Positions 1 through 58,910 of a stretch of DNA of 64,000 bases are shown one piece after another. The notes beneath the pieces were generated by a model. It did no database searches and was not told the origin of the DNA. It saw nothing but the letters and a program-made list of their open reading frames with translations. Each line of letters opens with the position of its first letter. Position 1 is the first letter of the stretch. Made by a program: the position numbers and the translations under genes. Origin of the DNA: Utricularia gibba (taxonomy: Eukaryota > Plantae > Magnoliophyta); assembly GCA_002189035.1 (NCBI GenBank), contig NEEC01000013.1, positions 682,001 to 746,000 on the forward strand. The letters are read 5' to 3'.

Positions 1-418
1 CGATCATTATAAAAGTAAGATATAAAATTATATTGAGTTATTTTTTTCCACAATTATGTGATAATGTCCAACTTTTAGGATGTAATTTTGTAATTTTTCT
101 TTCGATCTTGTGTTCCCTTATTGAATAAGTTACTCAATTGAAGTTGTTTGAATTTTTATAGAAGATTCGACCAAAATTTTCTCTACCATTGATGGTTACG
201 TCTACCATTTTCAACTTTAAATGTTGACACATGTTTTGCAGCCTTTCTATTTAAACCACACCCCTCAAATATAAGACTAGTAGGCTTCCTCATTAACCAC
301 TACAAATGCAATGAATACTATCTTTTCAGCTGCATCAATTTGTAACTGTGATAAACATCTTATGCTTGTATTTTGCATATTAATGGGCAACATAAATTGA
401 TATTATTTGCAAGAAATT

Positions 419-840
419 TTCCAAGGATATGCATGGATGCAACACGAAATGGCCAAAATGCATGATACAATGTATTTGTCAACGAAGATTGATTTCGTTA
501 ATTATAGCGTATTTGTCAACAAAAGCAACAGTGAATCCATCGGCTAAGGCAAAGATACCACTGGAGAAGCATCTAGCTTCAAGATTTACGGCATGAACTA
601 CACCTTCAAAGAATACAGCAAAGAGAGCAGCACATTCGCAAGTTACATCAACGAGACCTCACCCGTACAAGCGTCCATGGCGGCTGCCAGCACATTTTTA
701 CCGCGTGTAATAGTTTCTGAATTCCCATTTTCCTCCGCGATCAAGAAGACCTTCCATGCAGTCGATGATTCCAGCACTGCGAAAATGGTAACCGATGCCC
801 TCCACGAATGCGAACGAGCGCCGAGCCATTCTGTTCCCAA
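419..840 (+). pseudogene. Degenerate fragment of a polygalacturonase beta-subunit-like (PG1-beta/AroGP) BURP-domain gene
   Basis: One frame reads FQGYA...TKIDFVNYSVFVNKSNSESIG*GKDTTGEASSFKIYGMNYTFKEYSKESSTFASY (FxxY-type repeats), then TFLPRVIVSEFPFSSAIKKTFHAVDDSSTAKMVTDALHECERAPS (start of the BURP domain). In-frame TAA at 545-547; the segment between the repeats and FLPR and the CH-motif C-terminus are missing. Confidence 0.75.
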
Positions 841-1716
841 GATTCGGGTCTACGAAAAAAGCGGGTATTTTGGATCCCACTGTATTGCATCTGCACTTTT
901 TTATGATCATCTAGAATTTTAAAAAAACATGTAAACCCTGTACCCCAAAGTAACATTTCACAATAAATTTGAACCATTTTGCAACAGACAACATAATATC
1001 TCAAAAGTATTTATGTTAATTATCAAGTTCTCTATAGATGTGTTGATCAAATCAATAACTAATATACTAATATATTGTACTTGTTTCGAAATCTTGTTTG
1101 TGATAGAATATATGTATCTCATCTTATGCCCTGCATGACAATGTTTCTCATATAAGTATATTAATATATTCATCTCAAACAAAGAATCTATTAATACTGT
1201 TAGAATCGCACTCAAGACAACATGCCATGAACAATTCATGTGGCCCACAACACACAAGAAATCAAAGGCGAGAAAACCCACGAACACAAAATGAAAAATA
1301 TAATAAAAAAATCAAAACATAGTTCATTATGTGATGCACGTCTGTTTTAAAAAAAGAGAGATTATTGTTTGATGAAGGGCAAAATTGGAAGATTTGAGCC
1401 GTATTTACACACCACTCTTCATTTATGCAAATCGGCCGAACTGGTTTCCATTGGATGTACACCCAACATGCGACTTTATTTAGAATATTGGATTTACTGA
1501 CAAAAAGAAATTGATATGGAATTTTATAGGTGGATCTAAAATATTATGATTATTGATTTATAATTATTGAAAGTCCAATAAAAGAAATATAAATTACAAT
1601 CATATATCCCATTTAATACCACCTTTCATGTCCGTTTAAATTTCAAGGTTTCACACTTTTGGTACGAAAGTCCTCATATAAAACCCAGATACATTGAACC
1701 ACCGAAGCAGACACGA

Positions 1717-1798
1717 AAACAACGACTTTGACAAAGCAAAAGGCAGTGCAATAGACTAAACAACGACTTGGACAAAGCCAAAGGCAGTGTCATAGACC
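1717..1798. repeat. Imperfect 41-bp tandem duplication (2 copies)
   Basis: aaacaacgactttgacaaagcaaaaggcagtgcaatagact (1717) followed by aaacaacgacttggacaaagccaaaggcagtgtcatagacc (1758); lies just 3' of the peptide gene stop codon. Confidence 0.85.
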
Positions 1799-1828
1799 GG
1801 AGGTTTTCCCGTCAACCGGAGACGGAAA

Positions 1829-2214
1829 TTATGGAGTGGTGGATGCCGGCGATGGTGGTGGATTTCCACCTGAATCTGGAGGATCACTTCCCCCGTGACC
1901 TCCGAGATTGGGCAGCGGTGATGGTATTGATGTATTGGGATCCTCCCGCAGAAACCGTGATGACTGCCAGCTTTCACCACCTAACAGTTGGAGGAAAATG
2001 TTAAAGGAAAAAAGCAGACCGCATTCACAGAATGCGTACTTTTTCAATTGGATGAATCATGTATAGCAGGCAGGGATAGGGATAAACAGAAAAGAAAAAA
2101 ATGTGCATCGATTAGGGGAAAGAAAGTACTTGAAAACTCCTGGATTTTCCTGCCCGCTTCACATGAAGAAATCAGGAGGAGGAACAGAACCACTAGTGGA
2201 GCAACTTTCCTCAT
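1829..2214 (-). CDS. Putative small secreted Pro/Gly/Ser-rich peptide precursor, 78 aa, 2 exons
   Basis: Exon 1 2214-2130, GT-AG phase-1 intron 2129-1981, exon 2 1980-1829. Product MRKVAPLVVLFLLLISSCEA|GRKIQEFSSGESWQSSRFLREDPNTSIPSPLPNLGGHGGSDPPDSGGNPPPSPASTTP*. Basic-hydrophobic signal peptide ending C-E-A; TATA box 36 nt upstream of the ATG. Confidence 0.7.
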
Positions 2215-2249
2215 TTCCCAAGAGCTGAGCAGCTTCAACTAGTGTATGC

Positions 2250-2257
2250 TTTTTATA
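2250..2257 (-). promoter_or_regulatory. TATA box of the secreted-peptide gene
   Basis: Minus strand reads CCC-TATAAAAA-GC, 36 nt upstream of the ATG at 2214. Confidence 0.6.
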
Positions 2258-3479
2258 GGGGTCGAGTTTTGCGGTCCTCCTTCGTGTAGTTGAACAAGTC
2301 TAAATATCACCGCAAGATCCATTCAGATTGGGTCAGACGCCCAGCTACAGCAGCCCATATCACAAAGATTTTAACCTAGATATCAATAATTTAAATATTT
2401 TTCAACCTGAATATAGGTTTAATGAATTAAAACCTGTTTGATAGGTGGGTTATTGTTGTTTGGTTTTATTATTACATGCATCTGGTAAATTGGTTTATAA
2501 CAAGTATGTTTATCTGATTTATATATGAAGTTATATAAATACTCTTGACGATCAAACATATTGTATATATTTTAAATCCATCAATCCTTAATATTTGCTA
2601 ACGACTGTGTCATTCAAGGACACCCACCTCCAATCAAATGCTCGATTGTTGTCATTTATCATGTATTTCTTGTGATCTGATGCCCAGTGATTGATCTATT
2701 TATAAGTCTGCGGGAGAAATTTTTATTATAATTGATATGTTGCTATTTGTTGAAATAATTTATTAAATGTTGTTTACCAAAATAAGTGATATATATTTTT
2801 GTTTGTTGAAATATTTTTTTTATTAAAATAGTAGATAATTGATAAAGGTCTTAAGAAATATTGTTTGTGAAAATAATTGATATCTGATTATAGTAAAAAA
2901 ATTGTGCTTTTTCTATACCTTTTTCATTATTGTGGTTCCTTTTGTAGAATGATGAGGAATAAAATACTGATAATAGAAATGAAGACAATGATAGCAAGAA
3001 ATTGAAAATTTAATGGAAACTGGAAGAAGAGAAGCATTTAATTTTTACCTTAAAACAAGTAGTGAGATGGACTAAAGGTATTAAATGGGTTTAAAGGGGA
3101 TTATTATGAATAGTCAATTTTTCTTAAAGGGAAGTTGGGGTCTTATGTAGGCATACAATCCCATAATATTTCAAAGGTTCATAATTTGAAGAAGGAATAA
3201 TATTTACCTATGGATATCTTCTCTAGATTCGATATCGGTTTCAATGATGTGACTAACAAGCTAGATGCCAACGATGAGCAATAGAATAAACTAGAGTAGA
3301 TTAGGTATTTCTTTTATATGTCATTCAAATTTTAATTAACTTATATGGATGATTATACTACAGCATAATCCAAATATTCAAGGCCTGAGAAATAAAATGA
3401 CTTTATTACTACAATTGAATAGAAATATTAGACAAGGATAGAGTAATAGGAGAAGCAACAATAAATTGTACGCGAAAAA

Positions 3480-4102
3480 TTCTACGACTTCATGCACTTC
3501 ATTATGAGGGATTCTTTTAAATCCTGCATATTTCCAGTACTAAAACAACCCTTGATTTGCCACTTCGCAACTTCTTCGCCTAGACAACCCTTGGTTTGAC
3601 TTTCAGATAAAGATGTTTTATATCCTTTATCTTAATACATACACTTACTACAAATAAAGTTTGGAGTTTATAGGGAATACACTCATTCTTATAAATGCTT
3701 TCACATTCAAGAATATAGACAACAGAACAAGAAGTTAAGTAAGACAAAGAGATTTATAGTGATCTCAAAATCTTTGTAAACAACTTCAAAGGTAGTCAAA
3801 TCACACCAAAAAAACTGAGTGCTTACAATAAAACCCATTGAAACAATGTGTAGAGCAGACACATCTTCCATATACACATCGAATTCCTTGCCCCAAATCC
3901 AATAGATAATTGGAATTGAATATCTCACACAAAGTGTCTCATTCATAAGCATCTGTAAATTATGCATGCAACCAATCAGTTCGAGAAACACCATAAAAGG
4001 TAGGATGATTAACCTCAATTTATCGAAGTACCTTCTAAAATTCCGGTGATATGAAGAAGATTCCCACTGTGCAGCTTGTATTGCGGTGAAACTCAAGTCC
4101 AT
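3480..4102 (-). mobile_element. Possible Mutator/MuDR transposase N-terminal remnant
   Basis: ORF 3707-4102 (GFIVSTQFFWCDLTTFEVVYKDFEITINLFVLL; downstream KWQIKGCF) weakly resembles the MuDR VGQxF..L..F..AV.D(F/Y)AI and CxWRI motifs; very degenerate. Confidence 0.35.
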
Positions 4103-4379
4103 AGAAGATGAAATTCAAGGGAAGAGGATGTGCTGGTCTATGTGAGATTCAACATTTACGAGAATAGAAGAGATTTGAGTGAATTGTCAAATTGAGCAAC
4201 ATTATTTTCCAATGGCCCAAATTTAATTATCAAGCACTCATCTCAAGCTGTACCCTAGTCACTCCTTATACATGATAGCAGTATATTGATCACATTATCC
4301 ATTCTAAGAATGTGATGATGTAGTTACAAAAATTTCATTACTTAATTCATTAGTGTCTGCATCAACATTTTGAAAATCT

Positions 4380-5430
4380 TATCTTCGAGTGGGTTGGAAT
4401 GAAATTGTGGGGTAAGACACGTGCAAAAACTATGTGATTTTGATTGTTTATTAAATAAAAGCAATGACTACATGGCTCACCTCATTTTCATAAGTCTCCA
4501 AGCTCATTCAATTACATTTTTTATAGAAAAATGACAAAAATTGAAGTACTCATTCACATTTTTGGGTGTTTGAGTTCCAACACCCTAATCTTTCAAATGG
4601 TACCAAACCTTACTTTAAGGTACTAAAAATCTTTCAGAAATTTGCATAATTGTTATCATCTAAGTAATAAGTAAATATCACAAAAATGCATATATTATAT
4701 CATCAATTATATATAAATGATTGTTAAAAGATTTCTAGGTCAATATAAGCTACTTCTTCTATGTACGCACAGCTATCAATGCATCATTTAAAATATTATT
4801 ATCAATGTTAGAACTCTCCCATCCAACAAGAATATATATAAACTACATATTTTCATCACATATCTGGAGAATGTTCATAGATATTTGGTCTTGATTCTTA
4901 TAATACCTAGGTTTGAACTCTAAATCATTTGTACACCAATGTAGGTACCATTCAAAGCTCATACACAGTTCTTCAAGAAATCAATAAAAGTATATTATAT
5001 ATTATAACAAGAAAAATGCTAACAATAGGAAATAACACAACTACTCAAGTCACGATGCACTTGAAAATACTTAAATTTACCCAATAGAGATTGATTATTT
5101 TTGGGCTTTTCCAAAATAATCTCATAGAAGATAAGTATTGCATTTGGTACCTATTTAAAATACCTAGACAATATCTCTATAGATCACCTAAATATATTTT
5201 TTCTGACTCGCATCTTTTTGATGTGATAATAATACTTAAAATATAGCTACCATTTCATGAATACCTAGATACTTCCCTAATCATTGATTTGTGCGTATTT
5301 GTAAAATATAGCATAACTTTCCAAATACATCTCTAGATAATCTCAAATTTTCTAGTATTGCAGTATTAGTATATAACATAAGACTAGTTAAATATTCAAC
5401 ATGTTCGGGATTTAAGAATATTTTCTTTTA
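4380..5430 (-). mobile_element. PIF/Harbinger DDE transposase remnant (copy 1)
   Basis: Minus-strand pieces LENLRLSRDVFGKLCYILQ, HEMVAIF, RYYKNQDQISMNILQICD...YILVGWESSNIDNNILNDAL, YYLDDNNYAN, VWYHLKD*GVGTQTPKNVNEYFNFCHFSIKNVIE*AWRLMKMR*A match the DDE_Tnp_4 (HARBI1-like) consensus; many stops and frameshifts. Confidence 0.8.
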
Positions 5431-16602: not shown

Positions 16603-18815
16603 ATGGAAGATGCAGAAATCGGTATCAGGTAAGGATTTCTCGTAAATACGTTTGGTGAAAATCTTTTGGTGGACTTTGAATTGCAGTTGGTCAGAGATTT
16701 TGTTGATTTGCTTGTTATGCTGTGATTTAAAATTTTTTTTTTTCTGTTCTGATTATTAGGGTAAATGGTGTTGCTATAGAATCGCCCCATTTTTGTCTCT
16801 AGACTTTATGAAATATTTGGGCTTGAAGTTAGTTTTTTTTTATTATTTTGTTGTGATTGGCTTGATGGGAATGTTTTTGCAGTTCGGATATTGAAGTTGA
16901 TGAGATACGAGGTGATGAAGGTCTAGAGGAAAAAGATGTGAGTGATGAGGAGATTGAGGCTGAGGAGTTGAGGAAAAGAATGTGGAAGGACCATGTAAAG
17001 CTGAGGAGGATAAAGGAAAGAGAAAAGCTTGTAATTCAGAAATCTTCGGAGAAGCTGAAGAGCAAGTCCACCTCAGATCAGGCATGTCGAAAGAAAATGG
17101 CACGAGCTCAAGATGGTATTTTGAAGTACATGTTGAAGCTAATGGAAGTATGCAAGGCTCGTGGATTTGTGTATGGTATCATTCCTGAGAAAGGTAAACC
17201 AGTGAGCGGGGCATCTGATAATCTTAGAGCTTGGTGGAAAGAAAAGGTGAAGTTTGACAAAAATGGACTTGCAGCTATAGCAAAGTATGAAGCTGAATGC
17301 GTTTTGAAAGAAGATGGAGATGACAACAATGGAAACTCACAGAATGTACTTAAAGATTTACAGGATGCCACGCTGGGATCACTCCTGTCTTCATTGATGC
17401 AACACTGTGATCCACCCCAGAGGAAGTATCCTCTGGAAAAGGGAAACCCACCACCTTGGTGGCCAACCGGCAATGAGGAATGGTGGATGAGGTTAGGTCT
17501 TCCCACTGGGCAGACTCCTCCGTATAAGAAACCTCATGATCTGAAGAAGATGTGGAAGATAGGGGTCCTAACTGCTGTAATCAAGCATATGTCACCAGAT
17601 ATTGCGAAAATGAGAAGACTAATCCGGCAGTCGAAGTGTTTACAAGATAAGATGACTGCAAAAGAAACTGCGGTGTGGTTAAGTGTTTTAAGTCGGGAAG
17701 AAGCCCTCATTTGGCAACCTAGTTGTGAAAATGGTTCATCTGGCATTAGTGACGCACCTTCTAAAAGTCGTGGACATAAGAAGAAACCAACTGTTGAAAG
17801 TGATAGTGATTATGCGGTCGAAGATGTTGGTAGCGGCCTGGGAGCTGTGTCATCTAAAAGTGAAGGAAGACATCAATCACAGAGTATGAATCCTTCTGAA
17901 GCGTCATCCTGTGCTACAACTCAGGTCAAAAAACATGATGAGCGACCAAGAAAACGGAAACACCTAAAGTCAAATGCTGAACATGCAATGCATGGTGCAT
18001 CCAGAAACAAGCATGCACGTGATGATCTCGATGGTTCTTCTATGCAAGAACATCAAAATTCGATACCAGTGCATAGGTACATGATGAGCAACTCCCTTGA
18101 TGAAGTGAATAGAATGCCATCAATTATGCTGCATCGCAATGAGCAGGGGCAGGCCAACTTGGAAGAGTCTAATGTTGCCACCCACTGCTCATTTCCAACG
18201 ACTAATCCTGTCGCTATAGCAACTGCAGATCTCAGTAATAGGCACCTACATTTTCCAACCGTTCAAGGTTCTGATGTCATCCCCACTGGTCCAGATACAA
18301 CAACTCAAATGCCTCAAAGTAATAATTTGCATGGTCAGCGACAGCATTCTCAGTCACTGGGTCAGAATACTGTATTGGATCAGGGTCTTCAAAGCAGTAG
18401 ATTACACTACGAACCTATGCACGCAAATTCTCCATGGAAATATGGATTGCAAAACTTGGCAGTCCATCCAGGAACTCAGAGCTCAAGTAATCATCAGTTT
18501 AGTTCAAGTGTTGCAGGTGCTTCAGACATAGTTACAGGACTGTCAGCAGAAGTACTAACTGATTTTCCATATGGGCACGAGGATATTGCTACTCCTGGAA
18601 GTTTCCCTCATTATGTGAAAGGTGCACTACCAAAAGAGCCTGACAGGCCGACTGGGAATCAATTTCCATCCCCTCTCAGAACTTTGTCACCTGATTTAAC
18701 TGGATTCAGTACATTTGATCTTCCATTTGGTGGTGACAGTTTATTAGGCATCGACTTCCCCGTTGATGTTGATCCCACAGATGTAGATTATCTGATGGAG
18801 TACTTTGCTTCTTAA
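16603..18815 (+). CDS. EIL3: ETHYLENE INSENSITIVE 3-like 3 / SLIM1-type transcription factor, 2 exons
   Basis: Exon 1 16603-16628 (MEDAEIGI), GT-AG intron 16629-16882, exon 2 16883-18815. Acidic N-terminus [22 protein letters not shown]3 domain ([14 protein letters not shown]...PPWWPTG...[14 protein letters not shown]...[13 protein letters not shown]), and the C-terminal LMEYFAS typical of the EIL3 clade. The ORF track start at 16938 is a GTG. Confidence 0.95.
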
Positions 18816-35906: not shown

Positions 35907-37985
35907 TCACACATTGGGTGCGTTATCTATCGACCTACTCACGCACAGAACCTTGCACTTGAGTACCTTATTAACCACATAAAACCCTGGCATAACCATA
36001 ATCTTCACCCTCTCGGCGCCGCCGCCGTCCCGCTGCTGCCGGCCGAAGAACACATCCTCCATGTAATGTCCATCGAAAACAGCGTTCTCCCTCACCCTTA
36101 GTATCTCCAACGGCCGATCGAACGAGAACGACAGCAAATGCAGCAGCCACAAGCACTTCGCCGCCATGAAAAACGCCTCCAGCAACTGCTCCGGCCACGG
36201 CCGCGTCCACTGTAGGATTCCGATGATTCCGCTCATTTTCTGATCGCAGAACTTGCTGAACTCTTCGCTGTAGTACTTGGTTCCTTTCCTCAGTACCTCG
36301 TTCCAACTCAGATCTCGCAACGCCACGAACGATTCGAATTGCTCTTGCCGCCTTTTCTGCGGATTCAGAAGCTTCGGAGCACCGCTGTTTTGGTAGATGC
36401 AATTCTCGAAATCCTGGTACAGAGCTTGGTTGATGATGGACTCCAAATGGTAAACCACCGCCTTTTTTGATGATTTTGAGGTGATTAAGTCCAAATTGTG
36501 CGGCTGAAGCATGTTGTTCAGGTTCTCGATCACGCCGTAATCCTGCTCGTCGATTTGTCTGAGTAGAATCTTGCACAGATGCTTCACTGAAACCCTTGCT
36601 TCTGATACAATTTGCAGGAAACCCTCTTCCATTACTTCTTCACTCACCGGAATCGGCATCGTCTCTTCGGCTGCTGCTCCGCCGTCGATTGATTTCCCTA
36701 TTTTGTGAAGCTGCTTTTCACTAGGGTTGCCGATCTTAACCTGTAAACAAACATTTTGGATCAAATGCGATGAGGGTGAATGAATTGATGCTGCAAAATT
36801 GAAATTACCTGCACAGCTTGGCCCAGAGCCATCTTCAGTTCCTCACAGTATGATTCCAGGTACTCAAGCTTCTGAGTCAATTCCCCAAGAGAAGACTTCA
36901 TTTCAACAACCTGAGATAAAGCCGCATCCCTCCTCCTGTTCGCTTCAACTACTTCCCGTTTCAGCAATTCGATGGACATCGGGAACGCCCCTGTTTCTTT
37001 GGAAACCTGAGATTGTTCCTCGGTATGCGAATCTCCATATTTGTTGCTGTTCTTCTTCATTTTCATCATCAACCATGAAAAACCCAGGCCCCTCTTCTTC
37101 GGCTGTGGGTGAGGAGAGGAGTGGGAATCCATCAGTGGAACCACGATGTTCGATTTTCGGCCACTTTTTAGAACATCGGGATCTCTGGTTATGACGGCGG
37201 GCTTGCATTTGTTGCAGGACGATAGAGATTGGGTTTCTTCTAAGTTGTTCCTGGAGAAATCTGCAGTAGGAGGAGCTTTGAGCATGTTTAGGATTTGAAC
37301 GTCGGCTGGGCAAATGTGGGAACTGAAATCAACCGTCTCACGTTTTCTTGAAGAAGCATTTGGAGTTCCGTAATCGTCTCCCCAGCTGTCGCCGGAGTTC
37401 CAGCTTTCCAGTGGTATATGCCGGTAACCTGCTAGGAGATCGTTGCCATAGCTCTGTTCAGCACGGGAGCATAGGTTACCAACTTGGAGATAATAATATA
37501 CATTACAGGTATGAAACATCCACAGTAACGGTCCATAATGAAGAACAGTTAATTACTAATTCAGTCCTTGTAAAGTTACATATTTATCTTTGAAGCTTAA
37601 ATCTCCATCACTCAAATTGTCTAAAAAAGTTACAAACAACTTTTTCTTTTTTCAGGATCCAATCTTGATGAAAGCTTCCATGAAAGTGAAGGAGTTGCTT
37701 GGAATTGGCTGCTTTCCATGAGCAAAAATAAAGAAAGAAACTTGAAATTCTTCGGCAGAAACTTACAGGGGTGAAGACAGGATAATCCTGAGCTGAGACA
37801 TGAGGATTGTTGTGGAAGGAAAGAGGAGAAGTAGCCGGGAATCTGAGACTGGGGCTGTTCCCACTCGCTCCCTGCATCAGGGCGGCGTGAAGAGCTCGCA
37901 GCTCCACAGTCTGCGCAATCGCCTTCTGAATATCCCGCCTGCTGATGCCGTTCTCGGTGCCGTCATTCTTGGTGATGTCCGCCAT
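35907..37985 (-). CDS. IRKI: IRK-interacting protein (IRKI/GIL1-like), 3 exons
   Basis: Exons 37985-37767, 37453-36809, 36740-35907 with phase-0 GT-AG introns. Motifs AIAQTVELRALHAALMQG...SAQDYPVFTP|SY, SLSSCNKCKP, RDAALSQVVEMKSSLGELTQKLEYLESYCEELK, ESIINQALYQDFENC, LSWNEVLRKGTKYYSEEFSKFCDQKM, WTRPWPEQLL, VMPGFYV..KVLKCKVLC. Confidence 0.9.
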
Positions 37986-55600: not shown

Positions 55601-58600
55601 TCATCGGCTTCGTCTTCTCCGCTTCCTCTTCTCCTGCCTGCCATCATCGCTGTCTGATTCACTTGAAGTTGCCGATGATCCGGAGCCGTCGGAATCGGAA
55701 CCTGAAGTACCATCGGACTCGGATACAGCTGCTGTCTGCTGCTGCATTATGAGCCTTGGCATGTTCTTGAGATACTCCCGAAGGCTCTCGGTGATCCCTC
55801 CAAGACCGATCGAAGTGAAGAAGTTGATAGAGAACCTCGTGTTCTTAGGGTTATCCTTGGGGAAAATGGACTCAAAAGAGTCCTGCATGCTTGGATCGTT
55901 CAGACGCTCGTTGAGCTGCCGGATGCCGAGATGCTCCGACATCTCCTGGAAACCAAATCGATTTCACAATGTGAGATGAGGATCAGAGAGCAAACAAGGA
56001 GGAAAGGGAATTCGCTGGTCACCTGGAAGAGAATCTTTATGAAAATGCGAGAAGAAGAAGTTGTATCTTCTTCAGTCAGCCGTATGTACGACAACACATG
56101 CCATGGCAACTTGTCAGTTCCGAGGAGGTGACCAAAGAACTTGGCGACATTACGCAGTTTGTTGGTCTCCAGACGATGGATCATGGAATACTGCTGGACA
56201 AAGCACGTATCGAAGTTCTCCTGATAGATTTTTTTCTTCATACAGAGAGTGCCTCCAAGGAGGCCGTAGAATCGGAGGTAGGTTCGCTCCTGACTGCAGC
56301 ACTCCAGCAGCATAATGCACAGCTCCATCTGTACAAGCAACAGGCCACATGAAGACCAAGCTTGGGATAAATCATGGGCAAGAATTCATGCAAGTTTATG
56401 CAACACCTACCTCCTGTCCAGGCTCCAGCTTGATGCATAGCAGCTTATGCCCAGCCTCTTCATATGTAGCGCTTGACATGATTGTCAAGTAAATTGTTCT
56501 ACGGAGATTGATTAAATTGGTCTCCGTCTCATCCTTTATTTTCATCTTTTCTTCCTCTTCCTCGGACTCATCTTCCTCCTCCTCGTCTGAGTCGTCCTCT
56601 GCATCTGATGCATCGTTGTCATCAGATTCTTCACCCAGCATTTGCTTCTTTAGTTCTTCATAGTGCTTTTCATTCTCGGTGAACTGAGGATCAGGCTTGA
56701 AAATATCTGAAGGAACAGCATAGAACTTCAGAATTTGCTACTTCAAGCAGCTAAACAATTGCGCAATTCGAACTTTGCAATACCTAAAGCTATTTCAGGG
56801 TCTATCTCATCACTGAGGGAGACTTCATGGGTTAACTGGTCTTCCTCCTCGACTAGATCCAATTCTGGACGAACAGCTGGATGATCCTGCATAGAACCCA
56901 AAAAATAAATAAATAAATAAAAAAGAAATCAACACATGACACCTAACGCATATAAATCCCGTAATAATTTTTCAAATAAATTTCACCTGAAACTTGGCTC
57001 TTCGCAACCCAAAGAGTGACTCAATTAGGAATTGCACACGCATGTCAATTTGTCCTTCGGTGAGAATTCCACGAAACCGATCGAATATAGCTGTTAAGGA
57101 GGGGATTGAAGGGGTTCAGGAGAAAACAGAAATAGAAAATATGACGCAAAGAAGTTTCACAGCAAGTAACTAGATAATATCCCAATGAATGAATTTGTCC
57201 AGTTAAAAGGAAATGCATGCTAGAAGAGAAAAGACGCACCGTTCAACCCTCGAGGAGAGAGATCCTGTAATATGGCTCCGCATTCCGTGATAAAGCCGAC
57301 TGCAACTTCAACACTGTCATCGGTAGCCTTCTCTAGCAGCAAAGCCAACAACTCGAGAGCAATAAGCTCGTGAACTACTTGCTGGTTTACCAGATGTGCA
57401 ATGAATTTAACTGCGGCAAGGAGTTGCGGCTGCAAAAATTTCCCCAAAAGTCATTAGAATATATTTGATATCTACAAATTCTGCAAAACATTGAAATGCA
57501 CACCTTGTCATTGCGCTTGTATGCACGCTGAAACTGCAATATAATCCTCCTCAACAAAAGATCCCCTATTTCTGGGAACTTGGTATTGAGAACAGATACT
57601 AGTGCTGCAAATACATCTGTAAAACCAGGAGAAGCCATCTGAGACTTCATACATGACCGACAGAATAGTCCTCTTCCACGTATGAGATTCTCACCAAACA
57701 GCTCGGGAATAATATTCTTTATGTTGGTTGCATTCACCTTATTCACCAACCCATTAATGCTTTTCCTCAAAGCATCCCAAGTCATTCTCTGGTACTCAAT
57801 GCTACTCTTGTCCTGGATATCCTTCATCATCCTTGCCAACTTGTATGGTGGAATATAGATTCCCCCACTTCTCCCAAGGTTTGCGTCTGGTATGACATTG
57901 CTTTCTGGATTTTTCACTGTGGATAAATCTTTTTCCTTGTCATCTATCTTCAAGTTATTACTCATGCCATTCTCACTTCTCCTAGCATGTATATCACCAT
58001 TATCATCATTTCGTTTATCTTTTTTCCGGCTCTCCCTCTCCCTCTGCCTCTCTCTCCTATCATCCTTCTCATCGTCATACTTACTGTATTTTCCAACCCG
58101 TTCTCTGTACTCTCCCTTTTCAAAATCACCATCATCCCCGTGTCTTTCTCCTTTTCCATCTTTCCGACCATAGTACGTTTTTTGTTTCTCAGCTCTATCT
58201 TGGTGATCCCAGTTGTCAGCATCATCTTCATCCCTTCGCCCTGCCCTGTTATCATCATTGTTGTATCTGTCACCCCGTTCTCTGTTATCCCGCTTTCCAA
58301 CACCATCATCCCTTTTTCTTTCCCTCCTATGATCCTTCCCACCACTGTTCCTCCCTTGCTTGTCAACCCTATCTCTGTCATCCCATTCTTCATTATCATC
58401 CTCATCACTACGTCTTTCTCTCCTATCATCATAATTATATCTGTCACCCCTATCTCTGTTACCTCCCTTTTCAACATCATGTTCATCTTTTCGACTATCT
58501 TTTCTATCATTCACGTCATCATACTTTCGTTTCCCACTCTTATCCCTGTAACTCCCTTTACCAACATCATTGTTATCCCTTGAACCGTCGCGTTTATCAT

Positions 58601-58910
58601 CCTTACTATAATCATGCTTGTACTTGCGACCCTTGTCTCCGAAATCCTCCTCTTCATCATTTCTACCTCTTCTTGCATCCCTTCTATTATCCTTAATATC
58701 ATCATATCTTTTGGATATGCCACTTCTGTCTCTTGAATCCCCTTTTTCAGGCTCATCGTCTCGGTTCCATTCTCTTTTCTTACCTTTGTCCTTTCTAGGA
58801 CTCTCTGATTCTTGGTGCCTTTCACCTTCCAAATCGCTATCCTTATCATGCTCAGAATCATAATATTTTTGCCTGTCGTGACCCGAGCTTGGAATATTAT
58901 GACTTGAACA
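55601..58910 (-). CDS. CWC22: Pre-mRNA splicing factor CWC22 homolog (charged N-terminus, MIF4G, MA3); start codon not resolved
   Basis: [54 protein letters not shown] (exon ending 57504), further GT-AG exons, [58 protein letters not shown]. The frame is open upstream only to an in-frame TAG at 58913-58911. Confidence 0.92.

What the first reader, a model, noticed from the sequence alone, without database searches (positions are those of the whole stretch)
1829..2257. Unannotated two-exon secreted peptide precursor with HypSys-like and CEP/PIP-like modules
TATA box, ATG, signal peptide, phase-1 GT-AG intron and stop all line up, yet the ORF track shows only two unrelated-looking pieces. The mature part has two Pro-rich modules. 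DPNTSIPSPLPNLGGH follows RFLRE and ends in GH like CEP/PIP (SGP-rich) peptides. The C-terminal GGNPPPSPASTTP resembles the tobacco hydroxyproline-rich systemin core as I recall it (GANLPPPSPASSPP). It may be a lineage-specific post-translationally modified peptide signal. The similarity is short and low-complexity, so family membership is an inference.
Basis: partly seen in the sequence, partly recalled or inferred. Interest (0 to 1): 0.75.

Follow-up and report, generated by a model that had tools for sequence, protein, structure and literature searches.

The report
Orphan secreted proline-rich peptide gene
A small two-exon plant gene that an ORF list shows only as two pieces is very probably real and encodes a 78-residue secreted, proline-rich precursor, but its likeness to the tobacco wound peptide HypSys is one short motif, its likeness to CEP/PIP peptides is chance level, and no relatives were found.

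Summary
Together they give a 78-codon model.

This is unlikely to be chance. Of 2790 ATGs in the window, 4 pass a crude signal-peptide filter, and this one scores best and alone has a TATA box. The splice pair is the best of 25 in-frame options. The exons form a GC island whose GC content dips in the intron.

The genome belongs to the order Lamiales: its EIL3 gene is sister to that of Genlisea.

The recalled tobacco HypSys I sequence is correct. The C-terminal tail shares PPPSPAS with it (z 3.8; 0.2% of shuffles reach the score). But the precursor architecture, the taxon and the absence of detectable precursor homology all argue against membership.

The "CEP/PIP-like" module aligns to CEP1, CLV3, TDIF, IDA and PEP1 no better than shuffled sequence.

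Pfam, two word searches, an HMMER search of 1.84 billion proteins, the ESM Atlas and metagenome scans found no real relative.

The scan already noted this family on other DNA: s1-236229 (copy 1, reported as expressed) and s1-236294 (this same stretch).

Verdict: an ordinary orphan secreted-peptide precursor. A signalling role is inferred, not shown.

The parts
2327..2331 (-). CCAAT box, about 75 nt upstream of the TATA box
   Evidence: Read directly from the sequence. A consensus match only.
2251..2257 (-). TATAAAA box, 43 nt upstream of the ATG. This implies a very short 5' UTR of roughly 8-18 nt.
   Evidence: It is the only signal-peptide-like ATG in the window with a TATA box 20-90 nt upstream.
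2155..2214 (-). Predicted signal peptide, 20 residues: n-region MRK, a 12-residue hydrophobic core, and c-region SSCEA with Cys at -3 and Ala at -1
   Evidence: Translation. Heuristic scan gives a mean Kyte-Doolittle score of 3.39, the best in the window. SignalP was not available.
2130..2214 (-). Exon 1 coding part (28 codons plus the first base of a split Ser codon)
   Evidence: 45.9% GC.
1981..2129 (-). Phase-1 intron of 149 nt with GT..AG ends, T-rich (42% T), with a pyrimidine tract and a TTTAAC branch-like site before the AG
   Evidence: It is the best of 25 in-frame GT-AG pairs. No transcript evidence was obtained.
1829..1980 (-). Exon 2 coding part (2 bases of the split codon, 49 codons and TAA)
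   Evidence: 55.3% GC.
1946..1957 (-). RFLR, which fits the RxLx subtilase recognition pattern. This is a candidate propeptide cleavage site.
   Evidence: Sequence. The motif class is described for PROSCOOPs and SBT3.5 in PMC13157962. Cleavage here is an inference.
1895..1942 (-). Module 1, DPNTSIPSPLPNLGGH. It contains an N-glycosylation sequon NTS at 1936-1928.
   Evidence: Similarity to CEP1, CLV3, TDIF, IDA and PEP1 is no better than shuffled sequence.
1832..1870 (-). Module 2, the C-terminal tail GGNPPPSPASTTP, which shares PPPSPAS with TobHypSys I
   Evidence: score 48, z 3.8. Reference peptide from PMC10741408.
1717..1797 (-). 41-bp tandem duplication (2.0 copies, 90% match) in the presumed 3' UTR
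1612..1617 (-). ATTAAA poly(A)-signal-like hexamer 211 nt after the stop, at the start of an 18%-GC stretch
   Evidence: A consensus match only.

Best explanation
This is a real gene, or a very recently real one. According to earlier scan notes that I could not verify, it is the third copy of a small lineage-specific family in a Lamiales plant. It encodes a 78-residue prepropeptide. What the sequence shows: a cleavable N-terminal signal peptide, most likely cut after Ala20; a phase-1 intron just behind it; and a 58-residue acidic propeptide with no Cys or Tyr, whose last 36 residues carry 11 prolines and which ends in GGNPPPSPASTTP. What I infer by analogy with other small post-translationally modified plant peptides: the protein enters the ER; prolines in the PPPSP and SP/TP contexts are hydroxylated, and contiguous hydroxyprolines are O-arabinosylated in the Golgi; the propeptide is secreted and cut by apoplastic subtilases, with RFLR|E (an RxLx site) and the Asp residues before the tail as candidate sites; a glycosylated C-terminal Pro-rich peptide is then the functional product, most likely a ligand for a cell-surface receptor kinase. 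The resemblance to tobacco HypSys I describes what the tail probably works like, a Hyp-rich arabinosylated glycopeptide. It is not evidence of common descent.
For: The gene anatomy is coherent and rarer than chance. The exons form a GC island with a dip in the intron. No competing feature was found on either strand: Pfam found nothing for the antisense or alternative ORFs, and Rfam found nothing in 1-5000. Phase-1 introns are over-represented near signal-peptide cleavage sites (PMC1626468 abstract). The layout of signal peptide, variable region and Cys-poor Pro-rich C-terminus is the stated hallmark of post-translationally modified peptide precursors (PMC4154866). The PPPSPAS core is identical to that of an experimentally isolated Hyp glycopeptide. 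RxLx is a documented subtilase motif. As a lead only: scan note s1-236229 reports that copy 1, about 22.5 kb before the window, is expressed and spliced as modelled.
Against: No homologue was found anywhere, so purifying selection is untested. The 5' UTR implied by the TATA box is unusually short. The donor site is only moderate (AA|GTACTT). Scan note s1-236294 says this copy has rewritten the segment upstream of the core, which could mean relaxed constraint. The signal peptide was judged by a heuristic, not by SignalP. Modification, cleavage and receptor binding are all analogies.
Confidence: 0.55

Rival explanations
1. It is a true HypSys family member: a Lamiales descendant of the same ancestral gene as the Solanaceae and Ipomoea preproHypSys genes, reduced to a single-peptide precursor.
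For: GGN-PPPSPASTTP aligns with GANLPPPSPASSPP of TobHypSys I, with 7 identical residues in a row plus flanking G, N and P. The score of 48 is reached by 0.1-0.24% of shuffles. A signal peptide is present. Lamiales and Solanales are neighbouring lamiid orders.
Against: Known precursors are 146-291-residue polyproteins carrying 2-6 peptides (PMC11371470; PMC4621407). This one has 78 residues and one such motif, at the extreme C-terminus. Reviews confine HypSys to Solanaceae plus Convolvulaceae. An HMMER search of exon 2 against 1.84 billion representatives returned no plant protein at E<=1e-3. At about 0.2% per comparison, one such match is expected by chance, given the dozens of orphan Pro-rich tails noted in this genome and the roughly 20 known HypSys peptides.
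Confidence: 0.1
2. It is a tiny structural hydroxyproline-rich glycoprotein (extensin- or AGP-peptide-like) that is secreted into the wall or mucilage and is not a processed signal.
For: The tail consists of contiguous Pro plus SP, AS and TP dipeptides, the contexts that are glycosylated in hydroxyproline-rich glycoproteins. There is no conserved terminal His/Asn motif of the CLE/IDA/CEP type. An N-glycosylation sequon NTS sits in module 1, which is unusual for small peptide ligands.
Against: It has no Tyr for extensin cross-linking, no SPPPP repeats and no hydrophobic C-terminal GPI signal as in AG peptides. With only one short Pro-rich block it would make a poor structural polymer.
Confidence: 0.15
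3. It is a silent or decaying duplicate whose ORF is intact only because the duplication is young.
For: Neither exon shares three 5-residue words with any protein in a collection that includes transcript-derived calls. Note s1-236294 says this copy diverged upstream of the core. A 41-bp tandem duplication lies in the 3' UTR.
Against: The TATA box, ATG context, signal peptide, both splice sites, the frame and the stop are all intact. The species itself appears to be absent from the protein collection, since the best EIL3 hit has only 57% identity, so a blank says little.
Confidence: 0.15
4. It is not a gene, only a chance line-up of signals in intergenic DNA.
Against: The joint occurrence of the best signal-peptide-like start among 2790 ATGs, the only TATA-linked one, the best in-frame splice pair, an exon-shaped GC island and paralogues reported nearby is very unlikely by chance.
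Confidence: 0.05

Closest known systems
Hydroxyproline-rich systemins (HypSys; tobacco, tomato, petunia, potato, nightshade, sweet potato)
   Same: Both have an N-terminal signal peptide and a Cys-free precursor. The Pro-rich peptide here has an identical PPPSPAS core and flanking G.N...P as in TobHypSys I. It is expected to be hydroxylated and pentosylated in the secretory pathway.
   Different: The precursor has 78 residues with one such motif at the very C-terminus, whereas known precursors have 146-291 residues and release 2-6 peptides. The host is in Lamiales, not Solanales. No detectable precursor homology was found. Activity, induction and glycosylation are untested.
PIP/PIPL precursors (SGP-rich superfamily)
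   Same: The size is similar (prePIP1 has 72 residues). The layout of signal peptide, variable region and Cys-poor Pro/Ser/Gly-rich C-terminal part is the same, and module 1 has a GH end.
   Different: It has no SGPS motif. The GH-ending block is followed by 21 more residues. Alignment to the related SGP-rich peptides CEP1, CLV3, IDA and PEP1 is at chance level. A printed PIP1 sequence could not be obtained, so PIP1 itself was not aligned.
CEP (C-terminally encoded peptides)
   Same: Both come from secreted precursors with a Pro-rich domain of about 15 residues that ends in GH and can be internal.
   Different: The best local alignment to CEP1 (DFRPTNPGNSPGVGH) scores 23 against a shuffle mean of 24.2 (z -0.28), and it falls on a different part of the protein, not on module 1.
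Orphan secreted Pro-rich peptide precursor genes already noted in this genome (s1-236229, s1-253244, s1-219308, s1-239990 and others)
   Same: They share the same gene class and, for s1-236229, the same family: two exons, a signal peptide and a short Cys-free Pro-rich tail, all missed by ORF listing.
   Different: This is copy 3. Note s1-236294 says its segment upstream of the PPPSP core differs from copies 1 and 2. I could not read the other copies, which lie outside the window.

Membership tests
HypSys | N-terminal signal peptide directing the precursor into the secretory pathway | tested here: met
   Heuristic only: n-, h- and c-regions are present, with Cys at -3 and Ala at -1, and this start is the best of 2790 ATGs. 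SignalP was not available.
HypSys | A 15-20-residue Pro/Hyp-rich peptide with a central PPS-type core | tested here: met
   PPPSPAS is identical to the core of TobHypSys I, with z 3.8 against shuffles. This holds at the sequence level only.
HypSys | Polyprotein precursor of 146-291 residues releasing two to six peptides | tested here: not met
   The model has 78 residues and one HypSys-like motif. Known sizes come from PMC11371470 and PMC4621407.
HypSys | Sequence homology over the whole precursor, including the conserved stretch of about 30 bp around the signal-peptidase site | tested here: inconclusive
   An HMMER search of exon 2 against 1.84 billion representatives gave no plant hit at E<=1e-3, and the exon 1 word search was blank. 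No preproHypSys sequence could be fetched for a direct comparison.
HypSys | Occurrence in Solanaceae or Convolvulaceae | tested here: not met
   The window's EIL3 is sister to that of Genlisea (99/97 support) inside core Lamiales (100/97), while Solanales form a separate clade.
HypSys | Hydroxylation plus pentose glycosylation, wound or jasmonate induction, and alkalinisation or defence-gene activity | not testable with these tools
   This needs peptidomics, expression data and bioassays.
PIP/PIPL | Conserved C-terminal SGPS motif | tested here: not met
   No SGPS occurs anywhere in the product. The definition is from PMC4154866.
PIP/PIPL | Signal peptide plus variable region plus Cys-poor C-terminus | tested here: met
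   This feature is generic to all post-translationally modified peptide precursors.
CEP | 15-residue CEP domain (CEP1: DFRPTNPGNSPGVGH) | tested here: not met
   Local alignment gives z -0.28, and 62% of shuffles score as well. Pfam found nothing at E<=1.
CLE / IDA / PEP | 12-14-residue motif ending in H-N/H, with the family's conserved Pro/Gly positions | tested here: not met
   z values are +0.28 for CLV3, -0.08 for TDIF, -0.46 for IDA and -0.39 for PEP1.

The most novel reading that the evidence does not exclude
The C-terminal GGNPPPSPASTTP is a genuine HypSys-type arabinosylated hydroxyproline glycopeptide signal made in a Lamiales plant from a minimal single-peptide precursor. That would extend HypSys signalling beyond Solanales and offer a much simpler precursor for finding the still-unknown processing enzymes and receptor.
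Probability: 0.1. Interest if true: 0.6.

Novelty: new member of a known kind. Interest (0 to 1): 0.3.

Why it matters
If the gene is expressed and processed as modelled, it adds one more lineage-specific member to the large and poorly catalogued class of small post-translationally modified secreted peptides, which ORF-based and many gene-model pipelines miss. Its one distinctive point is a tail whose core is identical to that of an experimentally isolated defence glycopeptide from a neighbouring plant order. That makes a cheap and specific test possible: synthesise or purify the tail and assay alkalinisation, ROS and defence genes. As it stands, it is one of many orphan Pro-rich secreted-peptide genes already noted in this genome, and the family was already reported by the scan from another copy.

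Tried and rejected
- **Pfam.** Both exons, the two unspliced ORFs, the two antisense ORFs and the overlapping minus-strand ORF gave nothing at E<=1.
- **Word-index protein search.** Exon 2 and the unspliced exon-1 ORF both returned no candidate.
- **HMMER search of exon 2 against 1.84 billion representatives.** Only two hits reached E<=1e-3, and both are spurious.
  - P0001 is a 9x tandem-repeat uncharacterised protein of the tick Ixodes scapularis, whose score is summed over repeats.
  - P0002 is a bacterial SH3-repeat amidase.
- **ESM Atlas.** No usable hit.
- **Metagenome scans.** The protein-pattern scan matched 600 pattern stretches but none was confirmed by tblastn. An exact 30-mer of exon 2 gave no match.
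- **Other copies in the window.** tblastn and blastn found none.
- **Rfam on 1-5000.** Nothing.
- **Literature.** I found no printed preproHypSys precursor sequence. My recalled PIP1 string was found in no paper, so it was not used.
- **Readings rejected.** CEP, PIP, CLE, IDA or PEP membership of module 1. A GPI-anchored AG peptide, because there is no hydrophobic C-terminus. A sulfated-Tyr family (PSK, PSY, RGF, CIF), because there is no Tyr. A Cys-rich peptide, because there is no Cys after the signal peptide.

Full report
**Observation**

- TATAAAA lies at 2257-2251, with a CCAAT box at 2331-2327.
- The ATG is at 2214, with A at -3.
- Exon 1 is 2214-2130, which is 28 codons plus one base.
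- The intron is 2129-1981: 149 nt, GT..AG, 42% T and 37.6% GC, with a pyrimidine tract before the AG.
- Exon 2 is 1980-1829 and ends in TAA at 1831-1829.
- The split codon A|GT encodes Ser, giving a 78-codon model.

The mechanical ORF list shows this model only as two pieces in different frames, 2044..2238 and 1829..2047.

**Is it more than chance?**

I applied a crude von Heijne-type filter to all 2790 ATGs on both strands. It required a basic n-region, an uncharged hydrophobic core of at least 10 residues, and small residues at -3 and -1. Four ATGs pass. The one at 2214 has the highest core hydrophobicity (3.39) and is the only one with a TATA box 20-90 nt upstream.

Among the 25 GT..AG pairs that would fuse the ATG frame to the Pro-rich frame, the proposed pair scores best with a rough plant splice matrix. 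That matrix is taken from general knowledge and is not a trained model.

GC content forms an island over 1700-2300 (45-56%) flanked by 18-28% GC, with a dip to 37% exactly over the intron. An ATTAAA lies 211 nt after the stop.

Phase-1 introns close to signal-peptide cleavage sites are a known regularity (PMC1626468 abstract).

Nothing competes for the locus. The antisense and alternative ORFs have no Pfam match, Rfam finds nothing in 1-5000, and the region is not repeated elsewhere in the window.

Two weak points remain. The donor is only moderate (AA|GTACTT), and the 5' UTR implied by the TATA box is very short.

**Searches for relatives**

No search, look-up or fold was done with the joined 78-residue product, and that step is left out. 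The only joining was an in-script frame and length check of candidate splice pairs, which printed no sequence.

- Pfam: nothing.
- Word-index search: no candidate for exon 2 or for the exon-1 ORF.
- HMMER over 1.84 billion representatives with exon 2: two hits at E<=1e-3, both spurious. One is an Ixodes scapularis protein made of nine about 98-residue repeats, whose score is summed over the repeats. The other is a bacterial SH3-repeat amidase.
- ESM Atlas: no usable hit.
- Metagenome contigs: nothing by protein pattern or by an exact 30-mer.

These blanks are weak evidence. The query is 49 residues of low-complexity sequence. The species itself also seems to be absent from the protein collection, since its EIL3 finds nothing above 57% identity.

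**Whose genome?**

The window carries an EIL3 gene (Pfam EIN3 domain, 1.5e-122). Its best hits are all from Lamiales. In a maximum-likelihood tree of 28 EIL3 proteins it is sister to Genlisea aurea (99/97 support) inside core Lamiales (100/97). The Solanales (Nicotiana, Solanum, Capsicum, Ipomoea) form a separate, fully supported clade. Both sister branches are long, so the exact family is tentative. The order agrees with independent scan notes.

**HypSys comparison**

The recalled tobacco peptide is correct: TobHypSys I is RGANLPPPSPASSPPSKE (PMC10741408).

Local alignment gives GGN-PPPSPASTTP against GANLPPPSPASSPP with a score of 48. Composition-preserving shuffles of exon 2, or of its last 25 residues, reach this score in 0.1-0.24% of trials. 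The likeness is therefore not just composition.

It does not survive multiple testing. The scan has noted dozens of orphan Pro-rich secreted tails in this genome, and there are roughly twenty known HypSys peptides, so about one match of this strength is expected by chance. This estimate is my inference.

The family's other features fail.
- Known precursors are 146-291-residue polyproteins giving two to six peptides.
- Reviews confine HypSys to Solanaceae and Convolvulaceae.
- No precursor homology was detectable.
- I could not fetch a preproHypSys sequence to test the reported conserved stretch at the signal-peptidase site.

**CEP/PIP comparison**

I used peptide sequences printed in papers. 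The best local alignments of exon 2 give these z values against shuffles:
- CEP1: -0.28
- CLV3: +0.28
- TDIF: -0.08
- extended IDA: -0.46
- PEP1: -0.39

None of these is above chance, and the CEP1 alignment does not even fall on module 1. The product has no SGPS motif, which is the defining prePIP feature (PMC4154866). What remains is a GH end and a Ser/Gly/Pro-rich composition. Module 1 also contains an NTS N-glycosylation sequon, which would be unusual in a small ligand.

**Most likely mechanism**

The sequence shows a secretory signal peptide, most likely cut after Ala20. It also shows a 58-residue acidic propeptide with no Cys or Tyr, and a C-terminal Pro-rich tail that needs no C-terminal trimming.

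The following steps are inferred:
- ER entry.
- Prolyl hydroxylation, and arabinosylation of the contiguous hydroxyprolines, as in HypSys, CLE, PSY and extensins.
- Secretion.
- Subtilase cleavage. RFLR|E fits the RxLx pattern cut by SBT3.5 in PROSCOOP12 (PMC13157962). The Asp residues before the tail are possible phytaspase sites (general knowledge).
- The glycosylated tail acting as an extracellular signal.

The tail probably works like a HypSys-type glycopeptide. Whether it is a member of that family is a separate question, and the tests above mostly answer no.

**Rivals**
- True HypSys descent: 0.10.
- A small non-signalling hydroxyproline-rich glycoprotein: 0.15.
- A silent or decaying duplicate: 0.15.
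- A chance line-up of signals: 0.05.

**Earlier scan notes (leads, not support)**

Note s1-236229 describes a 74-residue paralogue about 22.5 kb before this window, with three copies in all. Its follow-up reported it as expressed, spliced as predicted, and orphan. Note s1-236294 concerns this very stretch and says copy 3 rewrote the segment upstream of a conserved PPPSP core. I could test neither, because the other copies lie outside the window. If both are true, they support the gene being real and the tail being the conserved part. They also weaken the idea that module 1 is a conserved second signal. The scan has therefore already found this family on other DNA.

**Verdict**

This is a new member of a known kind, a lineage-specific small secreted post-translationally modified-type peptide precursor. 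It is of modest interest.

Noticed in passing
window 593-922 (+): A 109-residue ORF matches part of the BURP domain (Pfam PF03181, E 6.2e-06, 26.4 bits against a cutoff of 27; profile positions 20-78 of 216). The usual motif after the conserved CE looks degenerate, so this may be a BURP pseudogene or an exon of a diverged BURP gene. It is convergent with the peptide gene. Scan note s1-186721 describes a BURP array elsewhere in this genome.
   Followed up: partly
window 1717-1797: A 41-bp unit is tandemly duplicated (2.0 copies, 90% match) in the presumed 3' UTR of the peptide gene.
   Followed up: no
window 16938-18815 (+): This is an EIL3-type ORF (EIN3 DNA-binding domain, 1.5e-122) that lacks its first residues and begins after a stop, so an upstream exon is needed. 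It is only 57-60% identical to its best relatives, and sits on a long branch sister to Genlisea aurea within Lamiales. That suggests a Lentibulariaceae-like, fast-evolving lineage.
   Followed up: partly
window 35907-37519 (-) and 57387-58832 (-): Two other large ORFs carry a GIL1/IRKI C-terminal domain (9.5e-08) and a weak MIF4G match (2.3e-04, below cutoff). They appear to be ordinary plant genes and were not examined further.
   Followed up: no
protein P0001 (NCBI KAM7308792.1, Ixodes scapularis): This 897-residue uncharacterised tick protein is made of nine near-identical units of about 98 residues. It was the top HMMER hit only because weak per-repeat scores add up. It is a reminder that repeat proteins can produce misleading E-values for short low-complexity queries.
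   Followed up: yes
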